IMG/VR virus record: IMGVR_UViG_3300020608_000013
Span: 124,001-188,000 of that record
Strand: one strand, 5' to 3'
DNA length: 64,000 nucleotides
The notes below the pieces were generated by a model. The model worked only from the letters and a program-made list of their open reading frames with translations, did no database searches and was not told where the DNA came from. Numbering within the stretch: position 1 is the stretch's first letter; the number at the start of each line of letters is the position of its first letter. Below, in pieces: positions 10,401 to 61,926 of this stretch. A program made the position numbers and the translations under genes.

Positions 10401-13400
10401 ATGACCTTATTTATAAAGCAGGTTCGTTTACCGTAGGTAAGGTTGCAGGTAAAACGGTTAGTGCGATATATCGTCCCCGTGATGTCTATAAGAAGGGTTC
10501 TCCCTACCCAGCGATGACTGCGGTAGATATGCGAAACGGTCTTTATAGAGACCGTGAAAGTGGTGAGGTCATTAACACTTTACGGGACATTAAAGGCGAT
10601 GTAGTAAATACAGATGGTGATCTAGTATTAACGGATACCGATATTCGTAACGGACTTTACGATAAGAACGCTCGCCGTATAACACTACCTTTCTCAACAC
10701 TAATGCGGATTAGTCGTCGACTAGCTGGGTTTGTTGGTAAAGGAGTTGGGCGCTCTACTTCTTTATTATGGAATGTCGCAACCTTTAGTCCGTTAAGACG
10801 TAGACGCGATAGAACACGACCTAATGTGGAAGGCGTTGAGGGCGATAATGGTAGTCTTCGTAGAGGGCAAGTAAACGCGCCAAGAGTTGTTGAGGTCAAT
10901 GACCCAACAATCGATAAAATCCCTACAAAATTGGATAAGCTCATCAATGTCATTAAAGAACGTATACCTGATCCAAGACGAGCGTTTAATGACCATGATG
11001 GTGATGGTGTGCGTGAGGGGTCATGGCGTAACCTATTTAAGAGGAAAGAACGTCGTGAAGAAAGTGGTCGCGGCGACGTGACGAATATCACCACGACTGA
11101 AGAGAAGAAGGGTAAGGGTTGGTTGCTTTCCCTGTTAGGTGGTGCAGGGGTTGCTACACTAATTGGTCTTAAAAAGATCAAAGAGTTCTTCTCTGGTAGT
11201 TTAATGGATATGCTTAAAGGCGTGACTGAAGTTGCTACTAAGAGTGTCACTACTGTCGGAGGCGGTATATTAAAATTACTCGTGCCCGCAGGTGCAACGG
11301 CAGCAGCCGTAGGTTTAGGTCAACGCCTCATTAACTCAATACGAGGGCTGGGTAATCGCACAAGTAATACTTATGACCAAGTTGCCAATAACGCACCGAG
11401 ACTACTTAACGCGCAAGGGATCGCAGGGAGCCTTAGTCGATTAGGCGCTAGTGTCATGGGTACTATCGGGGGTTGGTTAGGTCTTACAGGGGATAGTAAT
11501 GGTAATCGTTCAAATACACCAGCAGGTCAAAACCAAACGACACAAACGCAACCAAGTCAAACACCACAAAACCAAACAACTCAAGCGCTGAATGATGCGA
11601 GAGACACATTATCTAATGTCGAAAGACCATCGCAAGATGGGCGAAGAGGTGACGGACGAGATACTCGTGACAACCGCAATCCGTTGACGGAGGAGGATCA
11701 AGATCGTCGTGGGCGTGGTAGAGGTCGGGGTGGTTTACTACGAAGAGCGGGTCGTGGTCTTCTCAATTTCGGTAAATCCATGTTCGGGCTTAATGGTGGT
11801 ACAGGGATGGCTGCCAGCGCAGGTCGAGCGGCAGGTTTAGCACGCGCTGGGTTAATCGCTGGTAGTGTTATGTCGGGTGCAGGTGGGTTAGGTGCTGTTG
11901 TTGCGACAGCTAGTACTGTACTGGCCTCGCCTGTTGTACTAGGCGCTGCAACGTTAGCGGCTGTAGGTTATGGAGGGTATAAACTATACAAACATTTAAA
12001 CCGCAATAATGTGACAGGTTTTGATAAACTACGTTTACTACAATACGGTTATAGCGATGGGATGGAGGATCATTACTATACCGTATTACGTCTTGAAGAA
12101 GCCATGCAAGATAACTGCATTTCTTATAAAGATGGTGTGGCGACTATTGATGAGAAAACAGTACCTGTTGAAGAGATATTTGAAATTTTCGATATTCGGG
12201 CTTCAGATAGTACGTTAGTAGCACCTTTCTTGACATGGTTTGATAAACGGTTTAAACCTGTGTTCATCAGACACCTAACAGTGTTATATGGGTTAAATTC
12301 ATCGCTTAAGTTAAAAGAGATTGATAAACTTGGCGGTGATCAGAAATTGACTTATTTGAAGCGAGCGTTATTTGAGACTGGTCCTTACCACATTAATGTC
12401 TCACCGTTGCATTACTATAAAGAGCTTAGTGTTAAATGGGAACATGTTAAAGCACATGGCGAGTCATTGAAAACGCAGTTGAGTAATGAGGATGAGAAAC
12501 AGAGTCCTGGAACGGGACCTGGTAGCGCTTCTACAACCATCAAGGAAGGAGAGAAAGAACAAGTTGCTGATGTCTATAGTAAGGAGAAAGATGAAGGTGG
12601 GCAGAATGTGCCAAAAGGTGTTGATAAACTCATTGCTATGCCGCCCGCACCAGAAGGTTTGTTTAAAGGTATTGATGCGTCTAACGCACAACCACGTATG
12701 CCTGATAAACCTGTTGGAGTACCTTACATCGACCAATCCTTCCAAGGGAAGAGTGAAGCCTATGTACCCGCATCTAGCGGACATGAAAACTACTTAACTT
12801 ATCGTGTACACAGCCCACAGCAAACAGCGAGTAGTCAGCCATTACCCGAAGCTCCAGCGACTAAAGGGTATACAGTAGTAGAAGCAAAGGCTGAGGATGT
12901 ACCGCAAGAGAACTACACGCTTAATACAAATGTCGCACCGACTAAAAAGAACATGCTTGAGATTATTCGTAAAGCTGCGCTTAAAGTTGGTGGTGTTGAC
13001 CCAACCTTCGCTCAAACAGTCGCGGCTATTGAGTCATCATTAAACCCTAAAGCGAAGGCTAAAACAACTTCAGCCTCTGGACTATTCCAGTTTGTTAAAG
13101 ATACATGGTTCGAGCAAGTCAAGAAACACGGGAAGAAGTACGGGATAACTAATCGTACCAATCGCTTTGATCCAATGGCTAACTCGCTATTAGGTGTTGA
13201 GTACATCAAGTCTAACTTAGCTGCCCTTAAAAAGGTTAAAAGTAGCCCTAATGCGACCGACGCTTATCTAGCGCATTTCTTAGGTGCTGGTGGTGCGCGT
13301 ACTTTACTACGACACTTAGCGAAGAACCCGAACACTAAAGGTAATGCGATCTTATCCAGAGCTGCTAAATCGAACAAGTCTATTTTCTACAAGAAGGGTA

Positions 13401-15115
13401 GAGCGAGAACAGTTCAGGAAATCTACGACTTAATGACAAATAAGGTTAAGAAGAGAGCGGCTGAGTATGGTATACCTTTTAACGCTTCGGGTGGTATAAC
13501 TAGAAGTGGTTCTAGTGATGGAGAGTCTACTAAAGGGGAAGTTGTTAAGTCCTCACCTGTAATGGACGTGACGTTCAATAAAGATGGTGTATCGCCGCCT
13601 ACCCCATTACCTGCAAATGGTGGGTTGACAGGCGCTGGTGGTAGTGCTAATACGCAAGGGGGTGTTCCTACAACACCTGCTAGTTTTATGGGAACGAGTC
13701 AGCAAACGTTCGGTACAAATAGCGCGACTACGCCAAATGTAGAAGGTAGTGGCTCAGCAGATAAACTATTTGGCGGCGGCGCAGACTCTCCTGAAATAAC
13801 GGGTAAGGGTGACGGTGGTGGTACACAAGGTAGCAGTGTTGTTGGTCACGGCGGGGCGTTGAAAGACGGCTCTGGTGGTATGAAATACATCAAGAAGCAA
13901 CGTTCTAGTATACGTTTCAAAGGACTCAACCCTCAGCTCTGGAAACAATTTCTTGGGATGGCTGAAGAGTATGGTGAGAAGACGGGTAAATCGATTCAAG
14001 TTAACGATGGTTTCCGTACTCGCGCAATGCAAGAGGCGTTGTTTAAGAAATATGGTCCAGGACGAGCTGCTAAGCCAGGACATTCTCGACACGAGACAGG
14101 GTTAGCTATAGACATCCAAAGTGCTACTGCGGCTAAACTTGAAAAGCTTGGTCTTATGAAGAAGTATGGGTTCACCAGACCTGTAGGTCAAGAACCTTGG
14201 CATTTAGAACCCGCAGGTATACAGCTTGACCCTAAAAGGTCTAAAAGTGACCCTGAATATGCAAGTAAGATGATTGCAGCCTCCGCAGGGCGTGGCGGTG
14301 GTGGTTATGGGATGAAGAAAAATGCTCGTAAATACGGTCGTGATGTAAGTTTGGCAAAATCCCTATTCGAGGCAGGCACGCCGATTAAACCTTCAAAACC
14401 AGCGTCACCGACTAACCTCGACAAGACAGAGAAGACTGCACTGAACAAGGCAGGTATTACACCACCCAAACCTGCTATAGGGGGTGGAGGCGAAGCGCCC
14501 TCTAAAGATCAGACGATGGCTAAACTCGCGGAAGCGAACAAAGTTGTTACAGGAGGGACAACAACAAGTGGTGTTGAATATGGTAGAGACGGTAAACCCT
14601 TACCACCACTACCACCTGGCACGGTTAAAACAAACAACCCTTGGCCAATGCCATCAGCAACTAAAGCTGCGCCGACACCAGCGCCTATAGTTGCCACCCC
14701 ACCTGTTATTGATAACCTTTCTAATAGTGACGCGGTAGCAAGTGTGGATAGTGAGCCTAAACCTAAGTCTACGCCTACAACAGTGCCAAAACAAAACAGT
14801 AATGTACAATCTGTACTTAGTGGGTTGAACCCTTATCAATCAAAAGAGTTTTCACCAACGGCTGAAATTGGTACGAATACAGCAAACATGGCCAAGACGC
14901 TTAGTTCGTCAGATGTCACGCTTAGAGAGATAAAGAGTCTGTTGAATCAATACCTTAAACAAAACAAACCTTTGAATACGGGGGATAAAGTTGAAGAACT
15001 TAAGCAAGAGGAGAGTATTGTTAAACCATTACAATCTAAAAACCCTACTAGTGTACCGTTACCTACCATAACGGAATCAAAACCTTTGCCAGTAAATATG
15101 GAAAGATCGATATAA
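7415..15115 (+). CDS. Tape-measure/tail-associated lysin (phiKZ gp181-like) with lytic transglycosylase and M15 peptidase domains
   Basis: 2566 aa, next to the gp180- and gp182-like genes. SLT motif AAIESSLNPKAKAKTTSASGLFQFVKDTW (~12950-13470). M15/VanY-like GFRT..Q..L...AAKPGHSRHETGLAIDI...EPWHLE (~13910-14215). Hydrophobic Gly/Ala-rich central segments. Confidence 0.9.
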   Translation: MSLMSDNELHQLDSNEEDRMLDDLFNDDYDPQGFDKGSRDPIQSFYKGTRKELKETFTDSSKIEDLLEKTLPDEYAEALSVFNSTTSAIEDVVDASKNDFRYKAKEILTSTEKILPNKATSLKERISKLNESITIDDEDDGPIGISEEEELKQRRKEELSSALAKLARKEENRDIVTSAATSASVDNLTLSTVKGNQAILTALSALSRSTERTASFHEQITNSYYRKSLELQYRQLFTQIDTYKLSRSHFKEIELIMNKVQHNTGLPEFKKITQSERFAELSQTKFMMAAQDSLFGNAEFIKKGIENLKDKLGSKIDTIKNTASLVAQGKEAIGDEDPYEEAGKSFSKSLGVVLGKLFKGPTEEERLEALRDRAEREDPTSIWGKLYRKVTDEYHKRNDVFEENTSELRARVREIGQELGRNTASLEDVLNRTASSERLEDSMGDGFAKRFGKAAARNILSAFGEATDVNFEDRDIEDEFGAFAKRDKTTLNQVIPTLLSKIYDVTRAIHEGSDQVTETVYDRRDGKIKSREARGAEVRERFTGEAVASSYRGALEELHKKIDDLGDFDEVTSKEVKRKLSEIGFNDVLSNGLSAVNIDTLLNEKFYTPEEEDLSNKIREVLKDRLDDDKKLKGELNDELIRLRKNIRDVRGEMDEYRLEYGSDGLVDSGLITVDSNGSQSLNLDAYRRYLLGESVLQSTESERSEDTSTREETREHDPERSQRSVVDYTTLLTSIDQSLTVLTGRSVTDYSSPLTTLNDTVKTIAEKPTPDYTDAFTRITELLEEVSRKQPIDYSDKLDSTNALLTRLYERPTPSLTESLSETNALLESQVSRPDYDYSYHKQTNKLLSGIKEQLSNNGTDLQPILDGMASHRDSLIETHTLLHDKQLEVQGSLQSVVREMGETLLDCCQEQLNRLGTSKSQPTVEETYDTTSVETGDYKPIDLVELLSKRPEEIDPELLKRIDEQRYELVEETYTDGNEKVKGSLIESKLPAGYDLIYKAGSFTVGKVAGKTVSAIYRPRDVYKKGSPYPAMTAVDMRNGLYRDRESGEVINTLRDIKGDVVNTDGDLVLTDTDIRNGLYDKNARRITLPFSTLMRISRRLAGFVGKGVGRSTSLLWNVATFSPLRRRRDRTRPNVEGVEGDNGSLRRGQVNAPRVVEVNDPTIDKIPTKLDKLINVIKERIPDPRRAFNDHDGDGVREGSWRNLFKRKERREESGRGDVTNITTTEEKKGKGWLLSLLGGAGVATLIGLKKIKEFFSGSLMDMLKGVTEVATKSVTTVGGGILKLLVPAGATAAAVGLGQRLINSIRGLGNRTSNTYDQVANNAPRLLNAQGIAGSLSRLGASVMGTIGGWLGLTGDSNGNRSNTPAGQNQTTQTQPSQTPQNQTTQALNDARDTLSNVERPSQDGRRGDGRDTRDNRNPLTEEDQDRRGRGRGRGGLLRRAGRGLLNFGKSMFGLNGGTGMAASAGRAAGLARAGLIAGSVMSGAGGLGAVVATASTVLASPVVLGAATLAAVGYGGYKLYKHLNRNNVTGFDKLRLLQYGYSDGMEDHYYTVLRLEEAMQDNCISYKDGVATIDEKTVPVEEIFEIFDIRASDSTLVAPFLTWFDKRFKPVFIRHLTVLYGLNSSLKLKEIDKLGGDQKLTYLKRALFETGPYHINVSPLHYYKELSVKWEHVKAHGESLKTQLSNEDEKQSPGTGPGSASTTIKEGEKEQVADVYSKEKDEGGQNVPKGVDKLIAMPPAPEGLFKGIDASNAQPRMPDKPVGVPYIDQSFQGKSEAYVPASSGHENYLTYRVHSPQQTASSQPLPEAPATKGYTVVEAKAEDVPQENYTLNTNVAPTKKNMLEIIRKAALKVGGVDPTFAQTVAAIESSLNPKAKAKTTSASGLFQFVKDTWFEQVKKHGKKYGITNRTNRFDPMANSLLGVEYIKSNLAALKKVKSSPNATDAYLAHFLGAGGARTLLRHLAKNPNTKGNAILSRAAKSNKSIFYKKGRARTVQEIYDLMTNKVKKRAAEYGIPFNASGGITRSGSSDGESTKGEVVKSSPVMDVTFNKDGVSPPTPLPANGGLTGAGGSANTQGGVPTTPASFMGTSQQTFGTNSATTPNVEGSGSADKLFGGGADSPEITGKGDGGGTQGSSVVGHGGALKDGSGGMKYIKKQRSSIRFKGLNPQLWKQFLGMAEEYGEKTGKSIQVNDGFRTRAMQEALFKKYGPGRAAKPGHSRHETGLAIDIQSATAAKLEKLGLMKKYGFTRPVGQEPWHLEPAGIQLDPKRSKSDPEYASKMIAASAGRGGGGYGMKKNARKYGRDVSLAKSLFEAGTPIKPSKPASPTNLDKTEKTALNKAGITPPKPAIGGGGEAPSKDQTMAKLAEANKVVTGGTTTSGVEYGRDGKPLPPLPPGTVKTNNPWPMPSATKAAPTPAPIVATPPVIDNLSNSDAVASVDSEPKPKSTPTTVPKQNSNVQSVLSGLNPYQSKEFSPTAEIGTNTANMAKTLSSSDVTLREIKSLLNQYLKQNKPLNTGDKVEELKQEESIVKPLQSKNPTSVPLPTITESKPLPVNMERSI
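9596..9991 (+). repeat. Five to six tandem 22-aa (66-nt) degenerate repeats inside the gp181-like protein
   Basis: DYTTLLTSIDQSLTVLTGRSVT / DYSSPLTTLNDTVKTIAEKPTP / DYTDAFTRITELLEEVSRKQPI / DYSDKLDSTNALLTRLYERPTP / SLTESLSETNALLESQVSRPDY / DYSYHKQTNKLL... Confidence 0.8.
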
Positions 15116-15166: not shown

Positions 15167-17230
15167 ATGGGGATAACCTATATTAAAGAAAAGATCACTG
15201 ACCCAGTTAGTACGTTGACTATAGAAAAATGTGATACTGTTCTTGACGACCATTGGGCGAGAAATTCGTTCTTAGTAGGTACAAGAGAGTTCAACGAGGC
15301 TATTGATAAACGTAATCGCTTTTGGTCACTAGCAGACAATGACTACACCGATACTAGAATGGGTGCGAGTATTGGTGTGAACGCCAGACCGCAATTTACA
15401 CGCTACTCTGATATACGGCATAAAGGTCGGTTAAAGGGGCGTAACGATGTAACACTGTCAGACGTAGGAGGGAGTTACGGTAAAGGTCGCTTCTATAAAG
15501 AAGCGATCGATGAACCTAGTGAGACAGTCTATTTTAGAATGGGTGTGCCGCAATTCAGTTCACTTTTCCATTTCTTTTCTAACGCGTTCGACGCAAATTT
15601 AAGTTCGTTAGCAAGGACTGGTCGAACACGATCGATTCTCTATGATGCGTCTAAAGCCTTATCTACCGTCGCTTTTGTACTAGCGTTTCCTGTACTAAGT
15701 GCAGGTGTTTTTGCAGGTAAATTACTGGGCATGTATTTCGGTAGAAACACCTCGAAGTTCTACACATTAAAACCTACAATGCACCTATACTGGGGGGCGG
15801 TTAATACAATTCTTAACACTTTAGCGATTAACTCAGGTATATTACCTCGGTTTATGCATGGTGAGTACAACGACCAGCAAATCGGTGAGAACTATGAAGT
15901 TGATAAATCGATGTTAGATAATCTGCATTCGATTATGCCTGACATATTCGATAGTACCTATGGGTTATGTGCTTACGCGATCGCTAATAAAGCACAACGT
16001 AGGGCTATTAAAGCGAAACAAGATGAGTTTGATCGTTATGATAAAGCGTCAGCGCAAGAGTGGGTGGGAAAAGTAAAGAAACATCACCAAATGTATGTTG
16101 AAGATGTTCCTGGAGACCGTACGCTTATAAATTACGTAAGGAACTACATACAGCCAAGTTATTGGCTTTCAAAAGGTGATGAGGATGAAGAGAAACTGGC
16201 GAACGACCCGAAAACAGACCCAAAGACAGGTGATCGGTTACGAGAGCCTGATGATAAAGCAAAGTTCTTTGAGTCGTTAGATGCGAATTATTCTGACGGG
16301 AGTATGTTCGCCGCTTTTAAAGTTGATCATATCGCATCAGTTCAAGAATCGTTTTCTAATTCCGTAGGGGAGTCGGATATTGCTAGTAAATTTAACAGTA
16401 TTTCCGCAACAGGTAGAAATATACGATTTAATCTCGCAGGGGGTAACATCGGCGATGATGTGATTTCTGAAGGTATTGAGATGATCGGTATGGCAATCAA
16501 CGATACTGTTACTGGGTTAGCTGAAGGCGGGTCGTTAGGGTTATCTAATATCTTACTCGGGCTATCTGGCGCTGGGTTTATTGATGTACCAAAACAATGG
16601 CAAAACTCAACCGTCACCTTACCTGAAATAACGTATACGACTACACTAGTCGTGCCCTATAATAATGTGTTCTCAAGACTCCATAATTTATTTTTACCTA
16701 TTAGTATGCTCCTCGCTACAGTACTACCGTTGTCGACAGGTAAGGCTTCATACACTTCACCCTTTTTAGTGCAAGGCTTCCATCAAGGAAAACTTCAAGT
16801 ACAGACAGGTATTATGAAAAGCATGTCGTTTAAACGAGGCGCTACTAATTTACCTTTTTCGCCTGACGGTAATGCGTTGAGTATCGAAGTGTCTTTTGCA
16901 TTATACGATGTGTCGAGTATTATGCACATGCCCCTATCCACAGGGTCGTTATTTGGTACAGACATGACAGCCGACGAGGATAATATACTAATGGATTATC
17001 TTGCTGTTTTAGCGGGCCAGGGGTTGTATGATCAACTATATACACTCCCTCGCGCTAAGTTGAAGTTAGCAAAGACTATTCGTAAAATCACTACGCTAAC
17101 TTCCCCAAGCGCAATGGCTTCGTTTGCACACCACCAAACAACTTCTACTATCTTAGGCAGTATTTTCAGTTTAGGGTCTGGGCATATAGCACAGGCTGTT
17201 AGTTCAGGGTCAGACATTATACCCAAGTAA
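15167..17230 (+). CDS. Virion tail/baseplate structural protein (phiKZ gp182-like)
   Basis: 687 aa directly after the gp181-like gene; family-type motifs G.SIGVNARPQFTRYSD, IDVPKQWQNS, YNNVFSRLHNLFLP, SFKRGATNLPF. Confidence 0.82.
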   Translation: MGITYIKEKITDPVSTLTIEKCDTVLDDHWARNSFLVGTREFNEAIDKRNRFWSLADNDYTDTRMGASIGVNARPQFTRYSDIRHKGRLKGRNDVTLSDVGGSYGKGRFYKEAIDEPSETVYFRMGVPQFSSLFHFFSNAFDANLSSLARTGRTRSILYDASKALSTVAFVLAFPVLSAGVFAGKLLGMYFGRNTSKFYTLKPTMHLYWGAVNTILNTLAINSGILPRFMHGEYNDQQIGENYEVDKSMLDNLHSIMPDIFDSTYGLCAYAIANKAQRRAIKAKQDEFDRYDKASAQEWVGKVKKHHQMYVEDVPGDRTLINYVRNYIQPSYWLSKGDEDEEKLANDPKTDPKTGDRLREPDDKAKFFESLDANYSDGSMFAAFKVDHIASVQESFSNSVGESDIASKFNSISATGRNIRFNLAGGNIGDDVISEGIEMIGMAINDTVTGLAEGGSLGLSNILLGLSGAGFIDVPKQWQNSTVTLPEITYTTTLVVPYNNVFSRLHNLFLPISMLLATVLPLSTGKASYTSPFLVQGFHQGKLQVQTGIMKSMSFKRGATNLPFSPDGNALSIEVSFALYDVSSIMHMPLSTGSLFGTDMTADEDNILMDYLAVLAGQGLYDQLYTLPRAKLKLAKTIRKITTLTSPSAMASFAHHQTTSTILGSIFSLGSGHIAQAVSSGSDIIPK

Positions 17231-54013: not shown

Positions 54014-54047
54014 AAAAAAAAATAGGTGTTGGTCGCCAACCAACACC
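54014..54047 (-). terminator. Intrinsic terminator (near-canonical spacing), T9
   Basis: ggtgttggt-cgcca-accaacacc then TATTTTTTTTT on the minus strand. Confidence 0.8.
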
Positions 54048-54066
54048 CCACGGTTTACTACAACTT

Positions 54067-55451: not shown

Positions 55452-55529
55452 TTGAGTTCTCCTTTATTTCTCACTATATTTACTTACACGGTATTTTATT
55501 ACCGTGTAAGCTGTTACAAAATATGTTGT

Positions 55530-56108
55530 TTATTTAAATAAGTTTTTCAATCGACTTACAACATATTTTAAAGACCCCATTAACTGTTTTGTAATTAAGG
55601 TAGCGGCTAACGTAAAATTAAAACTAGTTTTCTCCATATTAGAAACTTTATCAATAGTGTGTGGTACATACCCATTTAGAAAAAGAAAGTAATGGTTTGT
55701 ATCACCACCATCGTCGACCGCATGAATAATATTAACGCCCCCACTCAAAGGTTTTGTAACACGATGCTTTAACCACTTAATGTGATAGATAATACTATAA
55801 CGCTCCTTTCCCACCCTAGTATTGACCCATTTCACAATAGGGTGGTAATAAGAATAACCTTTATCAATTACCTCTACTTCATTTAATAGATTAACGTCAA
55901 TAGATTCTAAAAACCGTTTATTGTTTAAGCAAATTAAATTAATTATAAATAACGGTTTATCAACGCGGACATAACTTACCACAGGGATAATTAATTTACT
56001 ATTTTTAAAGAACGTATATAGTGTATCATAGTTTATCCTACATTCGTAATAATCTACTACATAAGTCCAATTTTTAGCAAACATTTCTTCTTTACTAAAT
56101 ACATGCAT
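55530..56108 (-). CDS. Hypothetical protein, paralog family D
   Basis: FIINLICLNNKRFLESIDVN...KWVN matches 56131 YVIDLVCINDDYLLDNIDLN...KWVN. Confidence 0.75.
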   Translation of the reverse strand: MHVFSKEEMFAKNWTYVVDYYECRINYDTLYTFFKNSKLIIPVVSYVRVDKPLFIINLICLNNKRFLESIDVNLLNEVEVIDKGYSYYHPIVKWVNTRVGKERYSIIYHIKWLKHRVTKPLSGGVNIIHAVDDGGDTNHYFLFLNGYVPHTIDKVSNMEKTSFNFTLAATLITKQLMGSLKYVVSRLKNLFK

Positions 56109-56130
56109 AATAGCTTCCCCTACATTTTAC

Positions 56131-56643
56131 TTAAAAGTGGCGTTTAAACCAATTTAAACACTTTCTAAAAAACGACTCTACCTCTTCAAATGGCAGAGGG
56201 TTTACAGAAAGGTTATAATTTTCATTTAACCCGTAGCGGTGGTTTAACCATATAATCATACCAACATCGTCTTTTAGAACACTCATCTTTTCAAGTATGT
56301 TATCGGGGCAATCGGGTAGATTATGGTCTAGGAGTCGTTCTATGTGACCAACTGCTAGTTTACGATCGTTTTGGGGTAAACCATTTACCCATTTTGAAAA
56401 GTAAACATGGTCTTTAAAAAGCGCTGTGCTCGTAAGTACCCCACCATTTAAATCGATATTATCCAGTAAGTAGTCGTCATTTATACACACTAAGTCGATT
56501 ACATACCTAACATCTAAAGGGACAATGAGTTGCCTAGGCATAACCAACATTAAACCCATTGCTTTTTCGACATACGCTTCATACCTGTGGGGGTGCTCGT
56601 ATAGTTCAACAAAAAACAAGGGTACGTTTATACCTGATTCCAT
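56131..56643 (-). CDS. Hypothetical protein, paralog family D
   Basis: 170 aa; shared motifs as above. Confidence 0.75.
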   Translation of the reverse strand: MESGINVPLFFVELYEHPHRYEAYVEKAMGLMLVMPRQLIVPLDVRYVIDLVCINDDYLLDNIDLNGGVLTSTALFKDHVYFSKWVNGLPQNDRKLAVGHIERLLDHNLPDCPDNILEKMSVLKDDVGMIIWLNHRYGLNENYNLSVNPLPFEEVESFFRKCLNWFKRHF

Positions 56644-58325
56644 TTACGACCCCCATTGTGAGGTTGCGTAATAACGTTTACGCTTTTACCCATCTTCGTC
56701 AGTCGTTTAAAATTTTCCATACTACCAACTGACTTCCCATCCCATATTACAATACCTCTCGTACAATCCGTACTCATGTGAAAGTCTTTAGCCATGTGTA
56801 AGATACGTCCGTTACTACTCTTCGCTTCGATGTAGCGTAAATGGAATAGACCGCTTGCTAAATTACGCGGTTGTTTACCTGAGTAGTAGACCATCACATT
56901 CTTTTCATAGTGGTGCTTCTTCAAGTATTCTTGTACAAGCGTGTCTACACCGCTACAATCCCCCACAAACACGATTTCGTTATTAGTCATTAAAACATCA
57001 AGTCCTTTAATCACTTTAGGAGGTAATTCTCGTACAATAGACCGAGACCCACTTATGAAGACACTATCTCGACCACTAAATAAGTCAGCAAGAGGTTCTT
57101 TCAATAGCTGCTTAATAATGTTGTCAAACTCAACCACTAAAACGGAATCTACATTAGTGACATCTACACTATGCTCAAACACCTTGAGAATAATAGAAAA
57201 ATATTCATTATTATTCATTTTATTTTGAGCCACTTGTTCTTTAACACAAGCGATTATTTCATCACTATCTCTAAAGATAGTGTATTCTTGACATATTTTT
57301 TCCAGTATAGCGATCCCTGTCGCAACGCTAGTATTTAATATAGCATCAATATTACCTTCAATAGCTTGCTTAAAACTAGCTATTGTCTTTACAGGTGTTA
57401 TTGTAATACCCCCTGTTATTAACGTTTCAAAGAGTTTTTCAAAACTCTTCTCAGCTTCTAAAGTACTCCCAAGATTATCGAAATAATCACCCATGTCATC
57501 AATAGTCAACCCGTTAATAACCTCTACAGACTTGTTAAATAAGGTATTAAGTTCGTTCAATACGCGTTGATATTGCTCAGTGATATTATAAGACGCGATC
57601 TCTCCTTCAGATAGTGCGTAGGGTTCGAGAACCTTTCGTAAAAAGTAAATAAGCGTATTAGTGTCACCATTACCCAATACACCCGTTAACGCTACATCGC
57701 CCATAGCTTCTAAATCACGGGTCACACCATATGCACGCTCCACCTCTACTAGGAAGTTTAATATGGTGTAATTAGCTCGCTCTACTTTACTATTAATTAT
57801 GTTCAGTATATCGTATAGTGCGGTAACTACCACGACATCATTCACATAAAACAAGGTTTCTTCGCTACTTTCCCTAGCCTCTTCCAGTATTTCACCGACC
57901 AATCCGTCGTTTACTCTACCAGTTTCTTCAAGTTTAAAAGTTGCGTATTCTAATATCTCCTTTTTAAATTCTATTAATACTGAATTTATCATTTTAATAT
58001 CAATAGACATTAAGCATAGGTCGAGGTCATGAGTGGTCAACCCAGATTTAAACACTTTTAGTACATCAGGTTTTGACCGCCCGTCATTAATAATCTTTAC
58101 TATTTTATCATTGTCAAAGCCAAACTTTAGTCTATTATTTAACCATAATAACGTTTGCGTGAACCCTTTTGTATTGAGGGCACGTAGATCACTTTCGCTT
58201 AATTCAATAAGTATGAAGCCGTTAATATGCTTTTTACAAGCTTCTTTATCCTTTTCAGAGTACTCTGTGTTAGGTAGTGTTAGCGAATCTGCTATATCGT
58301 TTAATAATGTATTTTTTACTTTCAT
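56628..58325 (-). CDS. Helical N-terminal region fused to a C-terminal SLOG-superfamily domain
   Basis: C-terminal ~135 aa (~56660-57065): VFISGSRS, FVGDCSGVDTLVQEYL, PRN, KDFHM, GIVIWDGKSVGSMENFKRL...GKSV, which is the SLOG (YspA/YAcAr-like) Rossmannoid pattern. Confidence 0.8.
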   Translation of the reverse strand: MKVKNTLLNDIADSLTLPNTEYSEKDKEACKKHINGFILIELSESDLRALNTKGFTQTLLWLNNRLKFGFDNDKIVKIINDGRSKPDVLKVFKSGLTTHDLDLCLMSIDIKMINSVLIEFKKEILEYATFKLEETGRVNDGLVGEILEEARESSEETLFYVNDVVVVTALYDILNIINSKVERANYTILNFLVEVERAYGVTRDLEAMGDVALTGVLGNGDTNTLIYFLRKVLEPYALSEGEIASYNITEQYQRVLNELNTLFNKSVEVINGLTIDDMGDYFDNLGSTLEAEKSFEKLFETLITGGITITPVKTIASFKQAIEGNIDAILNTSVATGIAILEKICQEYTIFRDSDEIIACVKEQVAQNKMNNNEYFSIILKVFEHSVDVTNVDSVLVVEFDNIIKQLLKEPLADLFSGRDSVFISGSRSIVRELPPKVIKGLDVLMTNNEIVFVGDCSGVDTLVQEYLKKHHYEKNVMVYYSGKQPRNLASGLFHLRYIEAKSSNGRILHMAKDFHMSTDCTRGIVIWDGKSVGSMENFKRLTKMGKSVNVITQPHNGGRKWNQV

Positions 58326-58425
58326 GTTGATTTCCTAATTGTTGAAAAAATTTACCAATAACCCATTTCTTAATTTTACATTAGAACCTCCTTCATTTCT
58401 ACACAAACTATTTTTTTAAAGTGGT

Positions 58426-58481
58426 AAAAAAATATTAAAACAGATTATGTATAGGAGGTAGTCTAACTACCTCCCATACAT
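58426..58481 (-). terminator. Hairpin (58447-58481, one mismatch), 14-nt gap, then T7
   Basis: atgtat-a-ggaggtag-tctaa-ctacctcc-c-atacat. Confidence 0.65.
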
Positions 58482-58486
58482 CCACG

Positions 58487-58639
58487 CTACTCTTCTAAAT
58501 CACGGTGCAGGTGTTCGCCTACATCGATTGGCTCACTATCATCGTCGTCATCATCAATGGAGTCTACCACGGCATCAAACGTCAGTGACTCATCTTCTGG
58601 CAAACATTTTACCAAAAGGTTTATTAATTGTTCGATCAT
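58487..58639 (-). CDS. Hyperacidic micro-protein (50 aa), not in ORF track
   Basis: MIEQLINLLVKCLPEDESLTFDAVVDSIDDDDDDSEPIDVGEHLHRDLEE; 18 D/E; ATGA coupling to the upstream stop, GAGG SD. Confidence 0.65.
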   Translation of the reverse strand: MIEQLINLLVKCLPEDESLTFDAVVDSIDDDDDDSEPIDVGEHLHRDLEE

Positions 58640-58902
58640 GAATCGCCCTCCGTCTCAATACTACACTCTCTCAAATAGAGTTGTGTCACAGAACGATCTA
58701 ACAAAATACCAGCTTTGTTAGTTTTAGGGTAACTATACACTCTGTCTAGAAGCCTCCTCCGCACCTCTGCTAAAGTCGCGTTTGGTGTGAAAACCAGCCC
58801 ACAATCCCTCTCTAATAATTGACGGACTTTCACTACATCAAGTTGTCTTGAATGTCGCTCGATGACAACAGACACTGTGAAAAAATATGATACGTCGTTC
58901 AT
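58636..58902 (-). CDS. Hypothetical protein
   Basis: 88 aa, GAGG SD. Confidence 0.7.
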   Translation of the reverse strand: MNDVSYFFTVSVVIERHSRQLDVVKVRQLLERDCGLVFTPNATLAEVRRRLLDRVYSYPKTNKAGILLDRSVTQLYLRECSIETEGDS

Positions 58903-58918
58903 AATAACCTCTTATTAC

Positions 58919-59353
58919 TTAAGTTAAATTGTATCCACTACCGCAAATTACGGCAATGTAAGCTTTTGTACACTCTCTTATCAATTCTTTCTTTATACGA
59001 GGGTTCTTAATCGTGTTAATTTTCGCTAATGATGATTTAATAACCATAAGTCTAACCTCCATATAATCGTCTTTTAACTCCCCCTCAGTGAGAGGGTTTT
59101 CTAATTTACTATAAAACGAACAATCCTCCATTAAACGATTGTAGATGTTTTGGTATAGGAGACCCCTCATTTGCCCCTCTAGTACCTCTTTTTCTTTACG
59201 TAATGTTGTTCTTAAAAGAGCATCGTCGACGCTATCCTCATCTACCACATTCCATCGTTTTTTCAACTTAGACAAGTTTACATCACTCAGCTCTAGCTCG
59301 CGCTCTAGAAGCAATTGGGTAGGCATATCACCTAAGAATTTTAAGTGGTTCAT
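58919..59353 (-). CDS. Hypothetical helical protein
   Basis: 144-aa ORF. Confidence 0.75.
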   Translation of the reverse strand: MNHLKFLGDMPTQLLLERELELSDVNLSKLKKRWNVVDEDSVDDALLRTTLRKEKEVLEGQMRGLLYQNIYNRLMEDCSFYSKLENPLTEGELKDDYMEVRLMVIKSSLAKINTIKNPRIKKELIRECTKAYIAVICGSGYNLT

Positions 59354-59358
59354 ATTAT

Positions 59359-59808
59359 CTATCCTATATCATATATTACGAAATGGGTGTCTGTCCCCAT
59401 GTATTTTTCAATCATCGACGGGTATACGTCAGACCTTTCCAGTTTACCTAAACCACAACCTAATGGTGGTAACGCGACTGAATGTAGATTCATGTCTACA
59501 CTACATTGATATATTACATCTATCGCGGCTTTCACATACTCTTTCGTAGACTCATCTTTCCAATGTTTTTTAGTCGGTACGTTTAGTATGTAGTATGGCG
59601 CATAAGCGCCGTTAATTGAGTGGATCAACGCGCTCCCTATACGAAGACGACCTTCGCTACAAGCCTCTTTATAAAGAGTGTAGTTTTCAGGGTAATGGTT
59701 CTTAAACGCCAGTGCGAGACCTGCGCCTGAAACACCGACAGTGTTAACAGGGTTGATAATCGCCATCTCTGTGGCGTTAAAGATATTCCCACGCTTAAAG
59801 GTTATCAT
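59359..59808 (-). CDS. Macrodomain ADP-ribosylglycohydrolase, DarG-like
   Basis: ITFKRGNIF, IINPVNTVGVSGAGLALAFK..YPENY..YKEAC, NVPTKKHW (DarG-type catalytic Lys context), SVALPPLGCGLG. Confidence 0.92.
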   Translation of the reverse strand: MITFKRGNIFNATEMAIINPVNTVGVSGAGLALAFKNHYPENYTLYKEACSEGRLRIGSALIHSINGAYAPYYILNVPTKKHWKDESTKEYVKAAIDVIYQCSVDMNLHSVALPPLGCGLGKLERSDVYPSMIEKYMGTDTHFVIYDIG

Positions 59809-60611
59809 ACACTCCCCAGACCCTTTAACTTTTTACGTAAGATGCGCTCTCTTACAAAACTATATGGTGCTGTATAGAAAAATTTAAGTTTAGGCACTAG
59901 TCTTTCCTCTTTTAAATGAGCAACTAGGCTCTCTACAAGCACTTTTAAAAGTTTAGGGTTCGTTGTTTGGTACATAATAAGAGACATTTGTACACTCCCT
60001 TTATCAAGTGTACTTATTACGTCTTTTATTTCGGTATAAAAATGTAAAGACCCCCACGTAATATTTTTCTCCTTACACACCATGTAAAGTCTCAATGCGA
60101 ACAGAACGTAAGTAGTACGTGACTTAACCCCAAACTTACCATCAATGACTAACCTTGCTAGACTAACCGTATTCTCTTCCGTCATTGAGTTATCATGGCT
60201 CAATTCTGGTAAAGGGTGTGCGGCGGTAACTATTCGCCATTTTAGTAGCCCGTCTAACCATAACTCTCTCACAAGCGTTAATGGGTGTGTATAAGGTAGA
60301 TATGTAAACCCTAACAATTCTCTTGCTGTAAAAAAAACATGTGCGCCTGCAATGATGTACTTGTGGTCCATTTCAACATAACGCTGTAACCGCTCTTTAA
60401 CAACCTTATCTTTAACGTGATCAATCTCTCGCACTATTATATCTCTTATACGGTCCTCATTTACAGGGACAGTCTCCTTCTCTGTCATATTACTTAACTT
60501 TAAGTAAAATATTGTTAATTCATTACGGGCGCTCGTCCCATGCTGGTAGAATAATGTAGTGGACACCCAGTCCACTAAGTCTACTAATATTTTCTTATCT
60601 AGCTTACTCAT
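59805..60611 (-). CDS. Hypothetical protein
   Basis: 268 aa, coupled to the macrodomain gene (GTATGA overlap). Confidence 0.8.
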   Translation of the reverse strand: MSKLDKKILVDLVDWVSTTLFYQHGTSARNELTIFYLKLSNMTEKETVPVNEDRIRDIIVREIDHVKDKVVKERLQRYVEMDHKYIIAGAHVFFTARELLGFTYLPYTHPLTLVRELWLDGLLKWRIVTAAHPLPELSHDNSMTEENTVSLARLVIDGKFGVKSRTTYVLFALRLYMVCKEKNITWGSLHFYTEIKDVISTLDKGSVQMSLIMYQTTNPKLLKVLVESLVAHLKEERLVPKLKFFYTAPYSFVRERILRKKLKGLGSV

Positions 60612-60676
60612 TTTAAAATACCTTTTAGTATGAGACCATGTTCATATATGAACATGGTCGTGATTAAGCGCTTGTT

Positions 60677-61084
60677 TTAGAATTTAACCCCGTTAAATTC
60701 TCCATATAAAGCGAAGAAAGTAATATGTACTAGCATCTCTTTGATGCGAGATTTATACGCCTTTAGGAAATAGCGAATATCACTTCTTCTATTACGGACT
60801 GCATAGGCCTGCATATAAATACGACCCAATTCAACCATCGTGATCTGATCTTTCTTACACAAGATCAAAATCCTCGTGCGCTCGCAAGGGAGCGAGTTTA
60901 ACTTCTCTAATAGTTCGACGGCATCGTACGCCTCCCCCGTCACACTACATTCGTAATCTAGTACGAAAGCATGATTAAAAAAACCTGACAGGGTTTTCCG
61001 CGCTTCCACTCCTTTATTCCCATTTAGGATGTTTTTGAATTGAAGGAAGGTGTCATATTTTAATTGTTCACGACGTGTTGTCAT
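60677..61084 (-). CDS. Hypothetical protein
   Basis: 135 aa, GAGG SD, first gene after promoter 61139. Confidence 0.75.
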   Translation of the reverse strand: MTTRREQLKYDTFLQFKNILNGNKGVEARKTLSGFFNHAFVLDYECSVTGEAYDAVELLEKLNSLPCERTRILILCKKDQITMVELGRIYMQAYAVRNRRSDIRYFLKAYKSRIKEMLVHITFFALYGEFNGVKF

Positions 61085-61138
61085 CTTAATAACCTCTTAT
61101 AAATTTAAAGTATGGTATTATCCCTTAATACCATACTT

Positions 61139-61146
61139 ATAATATA
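61139..61146 (-). promoter_or_regulatory. Putative early promoter core TATATTAT
   Basis: Immediately followed by the hairpin aagtatggtatta-aggga-taataccatactt. Confidence 0.7.
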
Positions 61147-61175
61147 TGTTTATAATTAGCTATATTAACCCTTTT

Positions 61176-61231
61176 AAAAAAAAATATGATGCATTAGTTA
61201 GTATAAAGGTGGAAAACCACCTTTATACTAA
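61176..61231 (-). terminator. Hairpin (15-bp stem 61198-61231), 13-nt gap, then T9
   Basis: ttagtataaaggtgg-aaaa-ccacctttatactaa. Confidence 0.75.
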
Positions 61232-61239
61232 TAGATATT

Positions 61240-61926
61240 TTACATAATATCTAGAACAGAGCCTTTAAAGAGTTCGGTGTTTAACACCTCACCTCCACTA
61301 ACGTGGAGGTAGCCCAACTTGTCTAACGGTAGGTCTTTTAAATCGACTTTAAACCCCATTCCTGTAACAGAAAGAAAGTCTAAATGTTTATACCCTTTCA
61401 ATAAACTGAAGTCTGGTTGACTATCGACAGTCAGCATTATATTCAGCGCATCGTCTCTTAACCTGAAGATATTGTTGACAACATTACTACTAACGACCTC
61501 GATAGGCGCAATAAGTCCACATGACACCCCTCTAAAAGCTTCATCTGGGATGATAGTAGAGCCTTTTATAATCTCTCCAATTTCACGACGCACACGTACC
61601 TCAATACCAGCATCAATGCAAGCTAGTAAAGGTGCTACGTGTTTCTTGGCAGTACTACCTTCATAGTACACCGTCTTTAAGCCTTTAATGGCTGACAAGT
61701 CTTGCGTCTTAATACTACAATTCTCAATAACAATACAATTTACGCTACCTGTGATTAGTACATCGTACACGAACCCGTCACCTGTGAATACAAGTGTATC
61801 AAGGTCTTGTTTAATAGCAATTGGGTTTCTAATGGTGGCATTATTAAAAAATAATACATTTACTTTTACAGAAGAAACCATATTCTGACCAACGACTATT
61901 TCTTCAAAATATTTCACATTTTCCAT
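61240..61926 (-). CDS. Degenerate LRR-like protein (two-module family)
   Basis: DLDTLVFTG, VNCIVIENCSIKTQDLSAIKGLKTVYY, CIDAGIEVRV, YKHLDFLSVTG, DLPLDKLGYLHVSG. Confidence 0.55.
   Translation of the reverse strand: MENVKYFEEIVVGQNMVSSVKVNVLFFNNATIRNPIAIKQDLDTLVFTGDGFVYDVLITGSVNCIVIENCSIKTQDLSAIKGLKTVYYEGSTAKKHVAPLLACIDAGIEVRVRREIGEIIKGSTIIPDEAFRGVSCGLIAPIEVVSSNVVNNIFRLRDDALNIMLTVDSQPDFSLLKGYKHLDFLSVTGMGFKVDLKDLPLDKLGYLHVSGGEVLNTELFKGSVLDIM

What the first reader, a model, noticed from the sequence alone, without database searches (positions are those of the whole stretch)
56628..59808. Putative ADP-ribose/NAD counter-defence neighbourhood: SLOG fusion, acidic peptide and macrodomain in one putative early block
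Seen: a DarG-like macrodomain (59359) and a SLOG-domain protein (56628) lie 1 kb apart downstream of promoter 61139, with an acidic 50-aa ORF between them. A terminator at 58426-58481 separates them. Established: macrodomains remove ADP-ribose (DarG reverses DarT DNA ADP-ribosylation); SLOG domains bind nucleotides, and ThsA SLOG senses the Thoeris ADPR-derived signal. Inference: a locus countering NAD/ADPR-based immunity (DarTG, Thoeris, Sir2-type).
Basis: partly seen in the sequence, partly recalled or inferred. Interest (0 to 1): 0.65.

Follow-up and report, generated by a model that had tools for sequence, protein, structure and literature searches.

The report
Phage DarG-like macrodomain with SLOG partner
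An uncultured giant phage from marine vent biofilms carries an enzyme gene that most likely strips ADP-ribose off DNA to defeat the bacterial DarTG defence. One kilobase away lies a nucleotide-binding (SLOG) gene of a type that recurs beside or fused to such enzymes, a pairing already predicted in the literature.

Summary
ORF 59359-59808(-) is a 149-aa stand-alone DarG-type macrodomain. It matches NCBIfam antitoxin_DarG at 1e-44, and its best solved relatives are the T. aquaticus and M. tuberculosis DarG macrodomains at 3e-30. Residues N8, N22, T79, K80, H82, W83 and G117/G119/G121 are kept. It lacks the DarG C-terminal half and has no DarT neighbour, so it resembles the orphan antitoxin AdfM of PhiKZ (31% identity).

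ORF 56628-58325(-) is 565 aa. Residues 1-418 are an orphan helical region. Residues 419-565 fold confidently as a SLOG domain, closest to DprA, Moco carrier protein and YpsA, not to ThsA.

The two genes are in separate transcription units. The macrodomain operon has a phage-specific early-type promoter motif and ends at a strong terminator. The SLOG gene has no copy of that motif.

The same unnamed SLOG family sits next to a DarG-clade macrodomain in an unrelated ~200-kb phage lineage. It is also fused to one in about 33 metagenomic protein clusters. Many other family members have no macrodomain nearby.

The anti-DarTG reading is well supported. The Thoeris and Sir2 readings have no specific support. 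The SLOG-Macro coupling was already described by Iyer et al. 2022.

The parts
61139..61168 (-). Phage-specific promoter-like motif (TAATATA, about 13 nt, CATATATTATA), 62 nt upstream of the first ORF of the macrodomain operon.
   Evidence: TATATTAT is 17-fold enriched in upstream gaps (21 of 83). The aligned copies share an extended consensus. In RNAP-encoding jumbo phages, such AT-rich motifs proved to be early (virion RNAP) promoters wherever transcripts were profiled (PMC7598289). The early class here is inferred by analogy.
60677..61084 (-). ORF of 135 aa, basic (pI 9.4), orphan. First gene of the operon.
   Evidence: No Pfam, PHROG, PADLOC or NCBIfam hit. About 7% divergent in a related population.
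59805..60611 (-). ORF of 268 aa, orphan. Its stop overlaps the macrodomain start by 4 nt.
   Evidence: The ESM Atlas gave no usable hit. It is mostly removed by the 966-bp deletion variant.
59359..59808 (-). Stand-alone DarG-type macrodomain, 149 aa (AdfM-like orphan antitoxin).
   Evidence: It keeps N8, N22, T79, K80, H82, W83, G117, G119 and G121 of T. aquaticus DarG (alignment, residue roles from PMC5179494). It is the only macrodomain in the genome.
58919..59353 (-). ORF of 144 aa, orphan.
   Evidence: Only sub-threshold hits.
58636..58902 (-). ORF of 88 aa, orphan.
   Evidence: The PIN hit (0.015, 16.4 bits) is below the cut-off of 23.6.
58487..58639 (-). Acidic 50-aa ORF (pI 4.05, with an Asp run). 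Last gene of the operon, translationally coupled through an ATGA overlap.
   Evidence: No family hit. No counterpart in L005, L006 or L012.
58430..58481 (-). Intrinsic terminator (16-bp stem, 3-nt loop, T-run) ending the macrodomain operon.
   Evidence: -25.1 kcal/mol.
57072..58325 (-). N-terminal residues 1-418 of the 565-aa protein. Orphan region, predicted all-helical, fold not assigned.
   Evidence: No homologues of the full-length protein. AF2 without an alignment gave pLDDT 37.7. The Atlas model of the whole protein has pTM 0.33.
56631..57071 (-). C-terminal SLOG domain (residues 419-565) of an unnamed, widespread family.
   Evidence: 3,609 clusters at E <= 1e-3. AF2 pLDDT 92. Structural matches. 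Conserved motifs SGSR, GDxxGxD, RN, KDxxM and WDGxSxG(T/S). It is the only copy in the genome.
54024..54048 (-). Terminator-like hairpin closing the downstream unit (the SLOG gene plus ORFs of 170, 192, 110 and 351 aa).
   Evidence: -16.4 kcal/mol.

Best explanation
The locus holds two accessory counter-defence genes centred on ADP-ribose.

(1) The 149-aa macrodomain is an orphan DarG-type antitoxin. It is transcribed from an early-type phage promoter. It most likely hydrolyses the ADP-ribose that DarT-type toxins attach to thymidine in single-stranded phage DNA, and so neutralises DarTG defence, as shown for AdfM of PhiKZ. The homology and the conserved catalytic residues are shown here. The substrate and the counter-defence role are inferred.

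(2) The 565-aa protein ends in a SLOG domain of an unnamed family. That family recurs beside or fused to DarG-clade macrodomains. The domain most likely works in the same pathway by binding or processing an ADP-ribose-containing ligand: free ADPr, an ADPr-derived signal, or ADP-ribosylated or single-stranded DNA. The orphan helical N-terminal part supplies an unknown output or targeting function. The fold and the recurrent linkage are shown here. The ligand and the activity are inferred.

The acidic peptide and the other four small ORFs are orphan operon members with no assignable role.
For: Macrodomain:
- NCBIfam antitoxin_DarG 1.1e-44 and PADLOC DarG 2e-47.
- Best solved relatives are the DarG macrodomains, at 3e-30.
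- It keeps K80, whose K80A mutant is inactive, and N22, the next most important residue, plus H82, W83 and G119 (with PMC5179494).
- It is 31% identical to PhiKZ gp104 (AdfM), and the Asn that the authors mutated in gp104 (N23A) is conserved.
- AdfM removes DarT2 ADP-ribose from DNA and is needed for phage resistance to DarTG2 (PMC13309987).
- No DarT is found in the phage.
- The genome is of the PhiKZ type: RNAP beta subunits and a PicA-like gene.

SLOG domain:
- AF2 pLDDT 92, and every top structural match is a SLOG member.

Linkage:
- L005/L010, L012 and L006 form one lineage of ~200-kb elements that lack PhiKZ-type RNAP. There the macrodomain lies 1-3 kb upstream of the SLOG gene on the same strand.
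- L018 and about 33 clusters at 90% identity encode ~280-aa SLOG-macrodomain fusions.
- All three partner macrodomains have DarG as their best solved match.
- About 0.07 macrodomains are expected by chance in the 467 kb scanned. The Poisson probability of two or more independent lineages is about 0.002.
- In the tree, the linked SLOG domains sit in at least three separate places.
- Published comparative genomics reached the same conclusion for viral SLOG, Macro and NADAR domains (PMC9503650).
Against: - The two genes are in separate transcription units, and the SLOG gene lacks the early motif.
- Most members of the SLOG family have no macrodomain nearby. This holds for 12 loci with at least 3 kb on both sides, for Lak-B2 and Cba120, and for the macrodomains of LR756511 and PhiKZ, which have no SLOG neighbour.
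- The macrodomain differs from T. aquaticus DarG at T20, K29, Q34 and N120.
- Macrodomains are versatile in substrate, and Iyer et al. favour soluble ADPr derivatives as the targets.
- The host is unknown, and so is whether it carries DarTG.
- There is no RNA evidence.
- A natural variant deletes the 5' part of the macrodomain gene, so the gene is dispensable in some populations.
- The SLOG family lacks the Glu of the LOG PGGxGTxxE motif; Asn stands at that position. A LOG-like hydrolase mechanism therefore cannot be assumed.
Confidence: 0.55

Rival explanations
1. The adjacency in this genome is incidental. The macrodomain is an anti-DarT enzyme. The SLOG fusion protein has an unrelated role, for example DprA-like ssDNA handling or recombination mediation, or nucleotide-regulated control of its helical N-terminal part.
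For: The genes are in separate transcription units with a strong terminator between them. The best structural match is DprA. The family is usually found without a macrodomain. Iyer et al. list sporadic SLOG fusions to nucleic-acid-processing domains.
Against: There is independent adjacency in an unrelated phage lineage, and a family of direct fusions to DarG-clade macrodomains. The chance expectation is about 0.07.
Confidence: 0.25
2. The SLOG domain counters diffusible ADPr-derived immune signals (Thoeris-type cyclic ADPr isomers, His-ADPR and the like) by sequestering or degrading them, and the macrodomain cleans up soluble ADPr derivatives.
For: ThsA uses a SLOG domain to sense its signal, and the fold is shared (8wc0). 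Iyer et al. predict that viral SLOG domains act on ADPr derivatives produced by host immunity. The family has many invariant polar residues (D47, D52, R78, K104, D105, S123, N129), consistent with a defined small-ligand pocket.
Against: There is no specific similarity to ThsA (rank 43, TMq 0.48; not in the top 50 by Z). Known Thoeris sponges (Tad1, Tad2) are not SLOG proteins (stated from general knowledge). The partner macrodomains are all of the DNA-acting DarG clade. There is no experimental precedent for a phage SLOG sponge in the papers searched.
Confidence: 0.15
3. The macrodomain acts on ADP-ribosylated protein or RNA, or on ADPr-1''-phosphate or O-acetyl-ADPr, rather than on DNA. It might, for example, reverse host or phage ADP-ribosyltransferase marks.
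For: Phage homologues are annotated as ADP-ribose 1''-phosphate phosphatase (phrog_335 'phosphatase'). TARG1, a protein-acting relative, also matches (2.5e-5). Several ligand-contact residues differ from T. aquaticus DarG.
Against: The DarG macrodomains score about 80 bits higher than any other solved macrodomain class. W83, proposed to stack on the modified thymine, and K80 are kept. The nearest characterised phage protein, AdfM, acts on DNA.
Confidence: 0.15

Closest known systems
AdfM (PhiKZ gp104), the chimallivirus orphan DarG2-like macrodomain (Morgan et al., Cell Rep 2026, PMC13309987)
   Same: A stand-alone ~150-aa macrodomain of the DarG clade in a jumbo phage with PhiKZ-type multisubunit RNAPs. 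The Asn mutated in gp104 (N23A) is conserved. No DarT and no DarG C-terminal domain.
   Different: Only 31% identical, so it is closer to bacterial DarG macrodomains than to gp104. This phage is about 33% identical in RNAP beta to every known PhiKZ-like phage. A phage nucleus is not established: there is a PicA-like hit but no chimallin or PhuZ hit. Activity and localisation are untested.
DarG antitoxin of DarTG (T. aquaticus and M. tuberculosis; Jankevicius et al. 2016, PMC5179494)
   Same: The best sequence match (3e-30). It shares K80, N22, T79, H82, W83 and the G117-G121 loop.
   Different: It covers only profile positions 1-146 of 338 of NCBIfam antitoxin_DarG, and scores 153 bits against a cut-off of 250. 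It has no DarT-binding C-terminal domain and no adjacent DarT.
Viral SLOG-Macro/NADAR ADPr-processing neighbourhoods and fusions (Iyer, Burroughs, Anantharaman, Aravind 2022, PMC9503650)
   Same: A SLOG gene next to a Macro gene in a jumbo phage. The recurrent adjacency and fusion found here match their Figure 5h description.
   Different: This SLOG family passes no Pfam SLOG model. Here it carries a 418-aa orphan N-terminal region. No NADAR or DUF4326 accompanies it in this genome.
DprA, Moco carrier protein and YpsA (SLOG superfamily members with solved structures)
   Same: Same fold over the whole 156-residue model: Z 13.5-14.1, rmsd 3.1-3.4 A, 132-151 residues aligned.
   Different: Sequence identity is 10-18%. 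Pfam DprA, YAcAr and Nuc_deoxyrib_tr hits are found only below threshold, and only in some family members. The DprA SAM and winged-helix domains are absent.
ThsA SLOG domain (Thoeris effector sensor)
   Same: The same superfamily fold.
   Different: A weak match (Foldseek E 0.023, TMq 0.48, rank 43). There is no Sir2 or transmembrane effector domain, and no Thoeris context.

Membership tests
DarG-type macrodomain / orphan antitoxin (AdfM-like) | Macro fold detected by a curated model | tested here: met
   Pfam Macro 1e-15, 58.2 bits against a cut-off of 22.
DarG-type macrodomain / orphan antitoxin (AdfM-like) | Closer to the DarG clade than to other macrodomain clades | tested here: met
   DarG macrodomains score 107-108 bits against 29 bits or less for the alphavirus nsP3, TARG1 and TTHA0132 classes. 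PADLOC DarG 2e-47. NCBIfam antitoxin_DarG 1.1e-44.
DarG-type macrodomain / orphan antitoxin (AdfM-like) | Catalytic Lys80 and Asn22, and the ADPr-binding loop | tested here: met
   An ungapped alignment over residues 1-129 shows N8, N22, T79, K80, H82, W83, G117, G119 and G121 identical (residue roles). T20, K29, Q34 and N120 differ.
DarG-type macrodomain / orphan antitoxin (AdfM-like) | Removes ADP-ribose from thymidine in ssDNA and rescues DarT toxicity | not testable with these tools
   Needs biochemistry or genetics.
Full-length DarG antitoxin of a DarTG module | C-terminal DarT-binding domain and an adjacent darT gene | tested here: not met
   The protein is 149 aa, covers 1-146 of 338 profile positions, and scores below the equivalog cut-off. 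No DarT is found by the Pfam search or by tblastn. No PADLOC hit in the neighbours.
AdfM in the sense of Morgan et al. (a chimallivirus protein imported into the phage nucleus) | Encoded by a nucleus-forming phage and imported through PicA | tested here: inconclusive
   A PicA-family hit at 4.4e-9, but no chimallin or PhuZ hit. PhiKZ chimallin finds only 102 of about 306 RNAP-bearing phage records, so absence is not shown.
SLOG superfamily | Three-layer Rossmannoid alpha/beta fold matching solved SLOG members across the whole domain | tested here: met
   AF2 pLDDT 92 and pTM 0.87. The top 50 by Z are all DprA, MCP, YpsA, ShosA, LOG or TRPM, with Z from 14.1 down to 9.7.
SLOG superfamily | Passes a curated SLOG family model (YpsA, YAcAr, DprA or LOG) | tested here: not met
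   No Pfam hit for the window's domain. Only sub-threshold YAcAr, DprA and Nuc_deoxyrib_tr hits, in 6-7 of 108 relatives. The domain belongs to an unmodelled family.
ThsA-type (Thoeris) SLOG sensor | Specific similarity to ThsA SLOG and fusion to a Sir2 or transmembrane effector | tested here: not met
   8wc0 is at rank 43 with TMq 0.48 and is not in the top 50 by Z. The N-terminal part has no Sir2 or other Pfam hit.
Viral SLOG-Macro ADPr-processing pairs (Iyer et al. 2022) | SLOG and Macro adjacent or fused, recurring in unrelated viruses | tested here: met
   This genome: 1,034 bp apart. The L005/L012/L006 lineage: 1-3 kb apart on the same strand. The fusion family: L018 and P0154-P0186. The pairing is not universal.

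The most novel reading that the evidence does not exclude
The unnamed SLOG family may be a dedicated partner of DNA-acting DarG-type macrodomains. It would act as a DprA-like module that recognises ssDNA or ADP-ribosylated DNA, or that binds DarT itself. The phage macrodomain and SLOG protein would then together reconstitute a split DarG. In at least some bacterial DarTG loci, DarG is a Macro plus DprA-like fusion. The orphan 418-aa N-terminal part would add a new output.
Probability: 0.15. Interest if true: 0.7.

Novelty: new member of a known kind. Interest (0 to 1): 0.4.

Why it matters
- It extends the recently characterised AdfM-type orphan antitoxin strategy to a very divergent PhiKZ-like phage from marine vent and biofilm communities.
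- It gives a concrete, testable handle on an uncharacterised but very large SLOG family (about 3,600 clusters at 50% identity, no Pfam model).
- That family's repeated adjacency and fusion to DarG-clade macrodomains ties it to ADP-ribose biology. Determining its ligand would test a published but still untested prediction about how phages deal with ADPr-based immunity.
- The ~280-aa natural fusions are probably better first targets than the 565-aa window protein.

Tried and rejected
- Homologues of the full-length 565-aa protein: none by tblastn against GenBank phages, the word-index search or the IMG/VR pattern search. Only the C-terminal domain has relatives.
- Close relatives of the macrodomain in IMG/VR: none found by pattern search. 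The A2 alignment was too diverse for a pattern search.
- Near-identity DNA search against GenBank phages: no match.
- Paralogues of the neighbourhood genes within the genome: none at 1e-3.
- Fold of the N-terminal 418 residues: AF2 without an alignment gave pLDDT 37.7, which is unusable, so no fold search was run on it.
- Test of 'split DarG': profile-profile comparison of the SLOG family with bacterial DarG-like proteins gave no match (probability 0.1%). Comparison with only the DprA-positive DarG C-terminal regions gave a weak match (probability 9.7%, E 0.003 for one comparison, 104 columns). This is inconclusive and is treated only as a lead.
- Acidic peptide as an AdfB-like or DarG-C-terminal-like DNA mimic (idea from PMC11481870): it has no homologues and no conserved acidic ORF in the other linked loci. 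The idea is kept only as speculation.
No result.
- Chimallin and PhuZ: not found. The searches lack power for so distant a phage.
- DarT positive control through the genome search: not possible, because the record is not held. It was replaced by a tblastn with a bona fide DarT, which found noise only.
- ESM Atlas search for the 268-aa ORF: no usable hit.
- Contexts of three further SLOG representatives: short contigs, no macrodomain, no common theme.
- A second joint in run X5 (55653 to 57192): it has only 21 letters on one side and was disregarded.

Full report
CONTEXT

The window is bases 124001-188000 of a 212,020-bp IMG/VR virus record with direct terminal repeats. It encodes PhiKZ-type multisubunit RNA polymerase subunits. 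One matches phrog_2986 at 7.5e-136, and tblastn with PhiKZ gp055, gp074 and the major capsid protein gives hits. The best RNAP beta matches in GenBank phages are only about 33-34% identical, across all known PhiKZ-like groups, so this is a deep, undescribed branch. A PicA-family gene is present (phrog_3141, 4.4e-9). Chimallin and PhuZ were not detected. That is not evidence of absence, because PhiKZ chimallin itself finds only 102 of about 306 RNAP-bearing phage records. Near-identical DNA occurs in biofilm, hydrothermal-vent and marine metagenomes from three studies. No RNA runs hold it.

OBSERVATION CHECK

Gene order. All genes between 54 and 62.5 kb are on the minus strand. Read along the minus strand, the order is:
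- a promoter-like site at 61168-61139;
- ORFs of 135, 268, 149 (macrodomain), 144, 88 and 50 (acidic) aa, running from 61084 to 58487;
- a hairpin terminator at 58481-58447 with a T-run (16 bp; -25.1 kcal/mol);
- the 565-aa ORF at 58325-56628, followed by four more orphan ORFs;
- a second terminator at 54048-54024.

Promoter. The generic sigma-70 scan is not above shuffled expectation (39 found against 30.5 +/- 5.1). However, the site at 61146-61139 is a copy of a genome-specific motif. TATATTAT occurs in 21 of 83 upstream gaps, a 17-fold enrichment. The intergenic copies share an extended consensus: TAATATA, about 13 nt, then (C/G)(A/G)TATATTATA. Nearly all of them lie 40-110 nt upstream of minus-strand ORFs. 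In RNAP-encoding jumbo phages, such conserved AT-rich motifs upstream of presumed early operons have proved to be early (virion-RNAP) promoters wherever transcripts were profiled (Sokolova et al. 2020, PMC7598289). The macrodomain operon is therefore plausibly early. The 161-bp gap upstream of the SLOG gene has no copy, so that gene's timing is open. It could be read through from the operon or use another promoter class.

THE MACRODOMAIN

ORF 59359-59808 matches:
- Pfam Macro at 1e-15;
- PADLOC DarG at 2e-47;
- NCBIfam antitoxin_DarG at 1.1e-44, covering only profile positions 1-146 of 338 and scoring 153 bits against a cut-off of 250.

The best solved relatives are the T. aquaticus and M. tuberculosis DarG macrodomains (5m31 at 3e-30, 5m3i at 8e-30). 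They score about 80 bits above any other macrodomain class. The alignment is ungapped over residues 1-129, so the numbering is shared. N8, N22, T79, K80, H82, W83, G117, G119 and G121 are identical; T20, K29, Q34 and N120 differ. In T. aquaticus DarG, K80A is inactive and N22A is the next most damaging mutation (Jankevicius et al. 2016).

The protein is 31% identical to PhiKZ gp104, and the Asn that the authors mutated in gp104 (N23A) is conserved. Gp104 (AdfM) was recently shown to remove DarT2 ADP-ribose from DNA, to rescue DarT2 toxicity and to be required for PhiKZ to resist DarTG2 (Morgan et al. 2026).

No DarT is encoded by this phage, and there is only one macrodomain in the genome. Homologous macrodomains occur in 321 GenBank phage records. 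The reading as an orphan DarG-type antitoxin is therefore well founded by homology. Substrate and role remain inferred.

THE SLOG PROTEIN

The 565-aa protein has no full-length relatives and no Pfam family. It has a weak PHROG hit to phrog_289, 'GTP-binding domain', over residues 421-554 (6e-6).

The C-terminal 156 residues have close stand-alone relatives. A profile search finds 3,609 clusters at E <= 1e-3 and 1,362 at E <= 1e-10. These are mostly 130-190-aa proteins, plus some fusions. The family has no Pfam model. Only 6-7 of 108 members give sub-threshold hits to DprA, YAcAr or Nuc_deoxyrib_tr.

With a 108-sequence alignment, AF2 gives pLDDT 92.1 and pTM 0.87. All leading structural matches are SLOG-superfamily members:
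- DprA 3uqz: Z 14.1, rmsd 3.4 A, 151 residues aligned;
- Moco carrier protein 6y01: Z 14.1;
- YpsA 2nx2: Z 13.5;
- ShosA 8zva: Z 13.4;
- LOG enzymes: Z about 12;
- TRPM N-terminal domains: Z about 11.

Foldseek agrees: DprA 4ljk is first (E 3e-4) and ThsA 8wc0 is only rank 43 (TMq 0.48). Viral models of DUF2493/YspA, mycobacteriophage D29 gp61 and 'DprA-like' phage proteins also match.

Invariant or nearly invariant positions are G17, S18, G46, D47, G50, D52, R78, K104, D105, M108, W119, S123, G125 and N129. The position of the Glu in the LOG PGGxGTxxE motif is occupied by Asn, so a LOG-type mechanism cannot be assumed.

Residues 1-418 are predicted helical but could not be modelled (pLDDT 37.7 without an alignment). 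This part is an orphan.

IS THE LINKAGE RECURRENT?

(a) A 198.5-kb IMG/VR record with inverted terminal repeats and no PhiKZ-type RNAP (L005 = L010) has a macrodomain at 8607-9038 and a stand-alone SLOG gene at 9992-10456 on the same strand. A 200.7-kb relative (L012) and an NCBI contig (L006) share the arrangement at distances of 1-3 kb. These three are one lineage. Beyond these two genes, they share nothing detectable with the window's genome.

(b) Contig L018 encodes a 283-aa protein with the SLOG domain at residues 11-125 and a DarG-type macrodomain at residues 138-278. The word search returned about 30 near-full-length relatives at 70-96% identity. My profiles find both domains in 33 clusters. 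One of these lies in a 156-kb contig among SSB, RNase H and DUF4326 genes.

(c) All three partner macrodomains have DarG as their best solved match.

(d) At the density of such macrodomains in GenBank phages (322 places in 2.3 Gb), about 0.07 would be expected in the 467 kb of SLOG-centred DNA scanned. The Poisson probability of two or more independent lineages is about 0.002.

(e) In a quick maximum-likelihood tree, the linked SLOG domains fall in at least three places: the fusion clade (SH-aLRT 95), the window's protein, and the L005 and L006 branches. That run was the quick tree, not the finished careful search, and many forks are unresolved.

The linkage is not universal:
- 12 loci with at least 3 kb on both sides have no macrodomain.
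- Lak-B2 and Cba120 have the SLOG gene without a macrodomain.
- LR756511 and PhiKZ have the macrodomain without this SLOG family.

The association has already been described computationally. [quoted passage not shown] They report SLOG domains in 31% of jumbo phages. They predict that these domains sense or process ADPr derivatives made by host immunity.

MECHANISM

Most likely, the macrodomain is an early-expressed orphan antitoxin that reverses DarT-type ADP-ribosylation of phage ssDNA. The SLOG protein most likely acts in the same ADPr-centred pathway as a ligand-binding or ligand-processing module.

Which ligand is open. The signal-centred view (cyclic ADPr and similar) is the published prediction. 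I note a DNA-centred alternative, for three reasons. The partner macrodomains are all of the DNA-acting DarG clade. The nearest fold is the ssDNA-binding domain of DprA. Some bona fide bacterial DarG proteins next to DarT are Macro plus DprA-like fusions (P0197: PF02481 at 32.3 bits against a cut-off of 29.6; loci L080-L082). Direct profile comparison between that DarG C-terminal region and the phage SLOG family is not significant, so this alternative remains a lead.

No specific evidence supports a Thoeris or Sir2 target. The genome has no NADAR, DUF4326 or NAPRTase, and its only Nudix lies 107 kb away.

The acidic 50-aa ORF looks like a real, translationally coupled gene. It is an orphan and is not conserved in the other linked loci. 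A role as a DNA mimic or DarT blocker, by analogy with AdfB, is speculation.

POPULATION DATA

Contigs from four metagenomes cover the locus at about 99% identity for 55500-59449. Over 59814-61300 the identity in run X2 is only about 93%. In one hydrothermal-vent run, a 1,094-nt contig (depth 9.9) joins 59595 to 60562. This deletes 966 bp: codons 1-71 of the macrodomain and most of the 268-aa ORF. A lower-depth contig (depth 3.2) from the same run still lies inside the deleted stretch, at 60048-60178. This is contig-level evidence only. It fits an accessory, dispensable counter-defence gene.

VERDICT

Novelty is modest. The macrodomain is a new, divergent member of the AdfM/DarG orphan-antitoxin kind, and the SLOG-Macro pairing is a published prediction. 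Two things are new here. One is the 565-aa architecture with an orphan N-terminal region. The other is the delineation of a large, unmodelled SLOG family whose nearest members include natural fusions to DarG-type macrodomains.

Noticed in passing
window 7386, 19675, 28948, 39299, 42005, 46606, 47617, 61146 (minus strand), and about 17 more sites in G000:C1: A genome-wide promoter-like motif: TAATATA, about 13 nt, then (C/G)(A/G)TATATTATA. There are about 25 intergenic copies, almost all 40-110 nt upstream of minus-strand ORFs. It is probably this phage's early (virion RNAP) promoter class.
   Followed up: partly
window 59596-60561: A hydrothermal-vent metagenome contig (run X4, depth 9.9) lacks these 966 bp. 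That removes codons 1-71 of the macrodomain and most of the 268-aa ORF. The intact form is also present in that run at depth 3.2.
   Followed up: partly
window 59814-61300 compared with 55500-59449: In a related population (run X2), the two ORFs upstream of the macrodomain differ at about 7% of positions and carry a 14-nt and a 3-nt deletion. The macrodomain-to-SLOG stretch differs by only about 1%.
   Followed up: no
G000:C1:81170-82348 (outside the window): A PicA-family gene (phrog_3141, 4.4e-9) is present, but no chimallin or PhuZ was detected. Whether this divergent PhiKZ-like phage builds a nucleus is open.
   Followed up: partly
L080 6716-9224 (also L081, L082): These are bacterial DarTG loci. 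The DarT gene has an added weak HD-domain hit. The DarG is a 407-aa fusion of a macrodomain and a DprA-like (PF02481) domain.
   Followed up: partly
L018 195-782: The contig that carries the SLOG-macrodomain fusion also encodes a second, different YpsA-like SLOG protein just upstream.
   Followed up: no
L078 1-67 and 16658-16846: In a 156-kb contig, the fusion gene is flanked by two DUF4326-containing proteins, one of 1,965 aa. Iyer et al. link DUF4326 to ADPr processing.
   Followed up: no
P0007 (362 aa): This protein has a Pfam YpsA domain (2.9e-21) followed by a copy of the unnamed SLOG family, so it is a tandem of two SLOG domains.
   Followed up: no
window 7415-15115 (+): A single 2,566-aa ORF. 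It lies in the part of the window with higher GC (0.42-0.46) and positive GC skew. It was not examined.
   Followed up: no
window 15167-17230 (+): A 687-aa protein that matches phrog_3181 (unknown function) at 6e-155. It is a conserved jumbo-phage protein but is not chimallin.
   Followed up: partly
G000:C1:73849-74184: The only other ADPr- or nucleotide-related domain found in the genome is a Nudix hydrolase, 107 kb from the locus.
   Followed up: no
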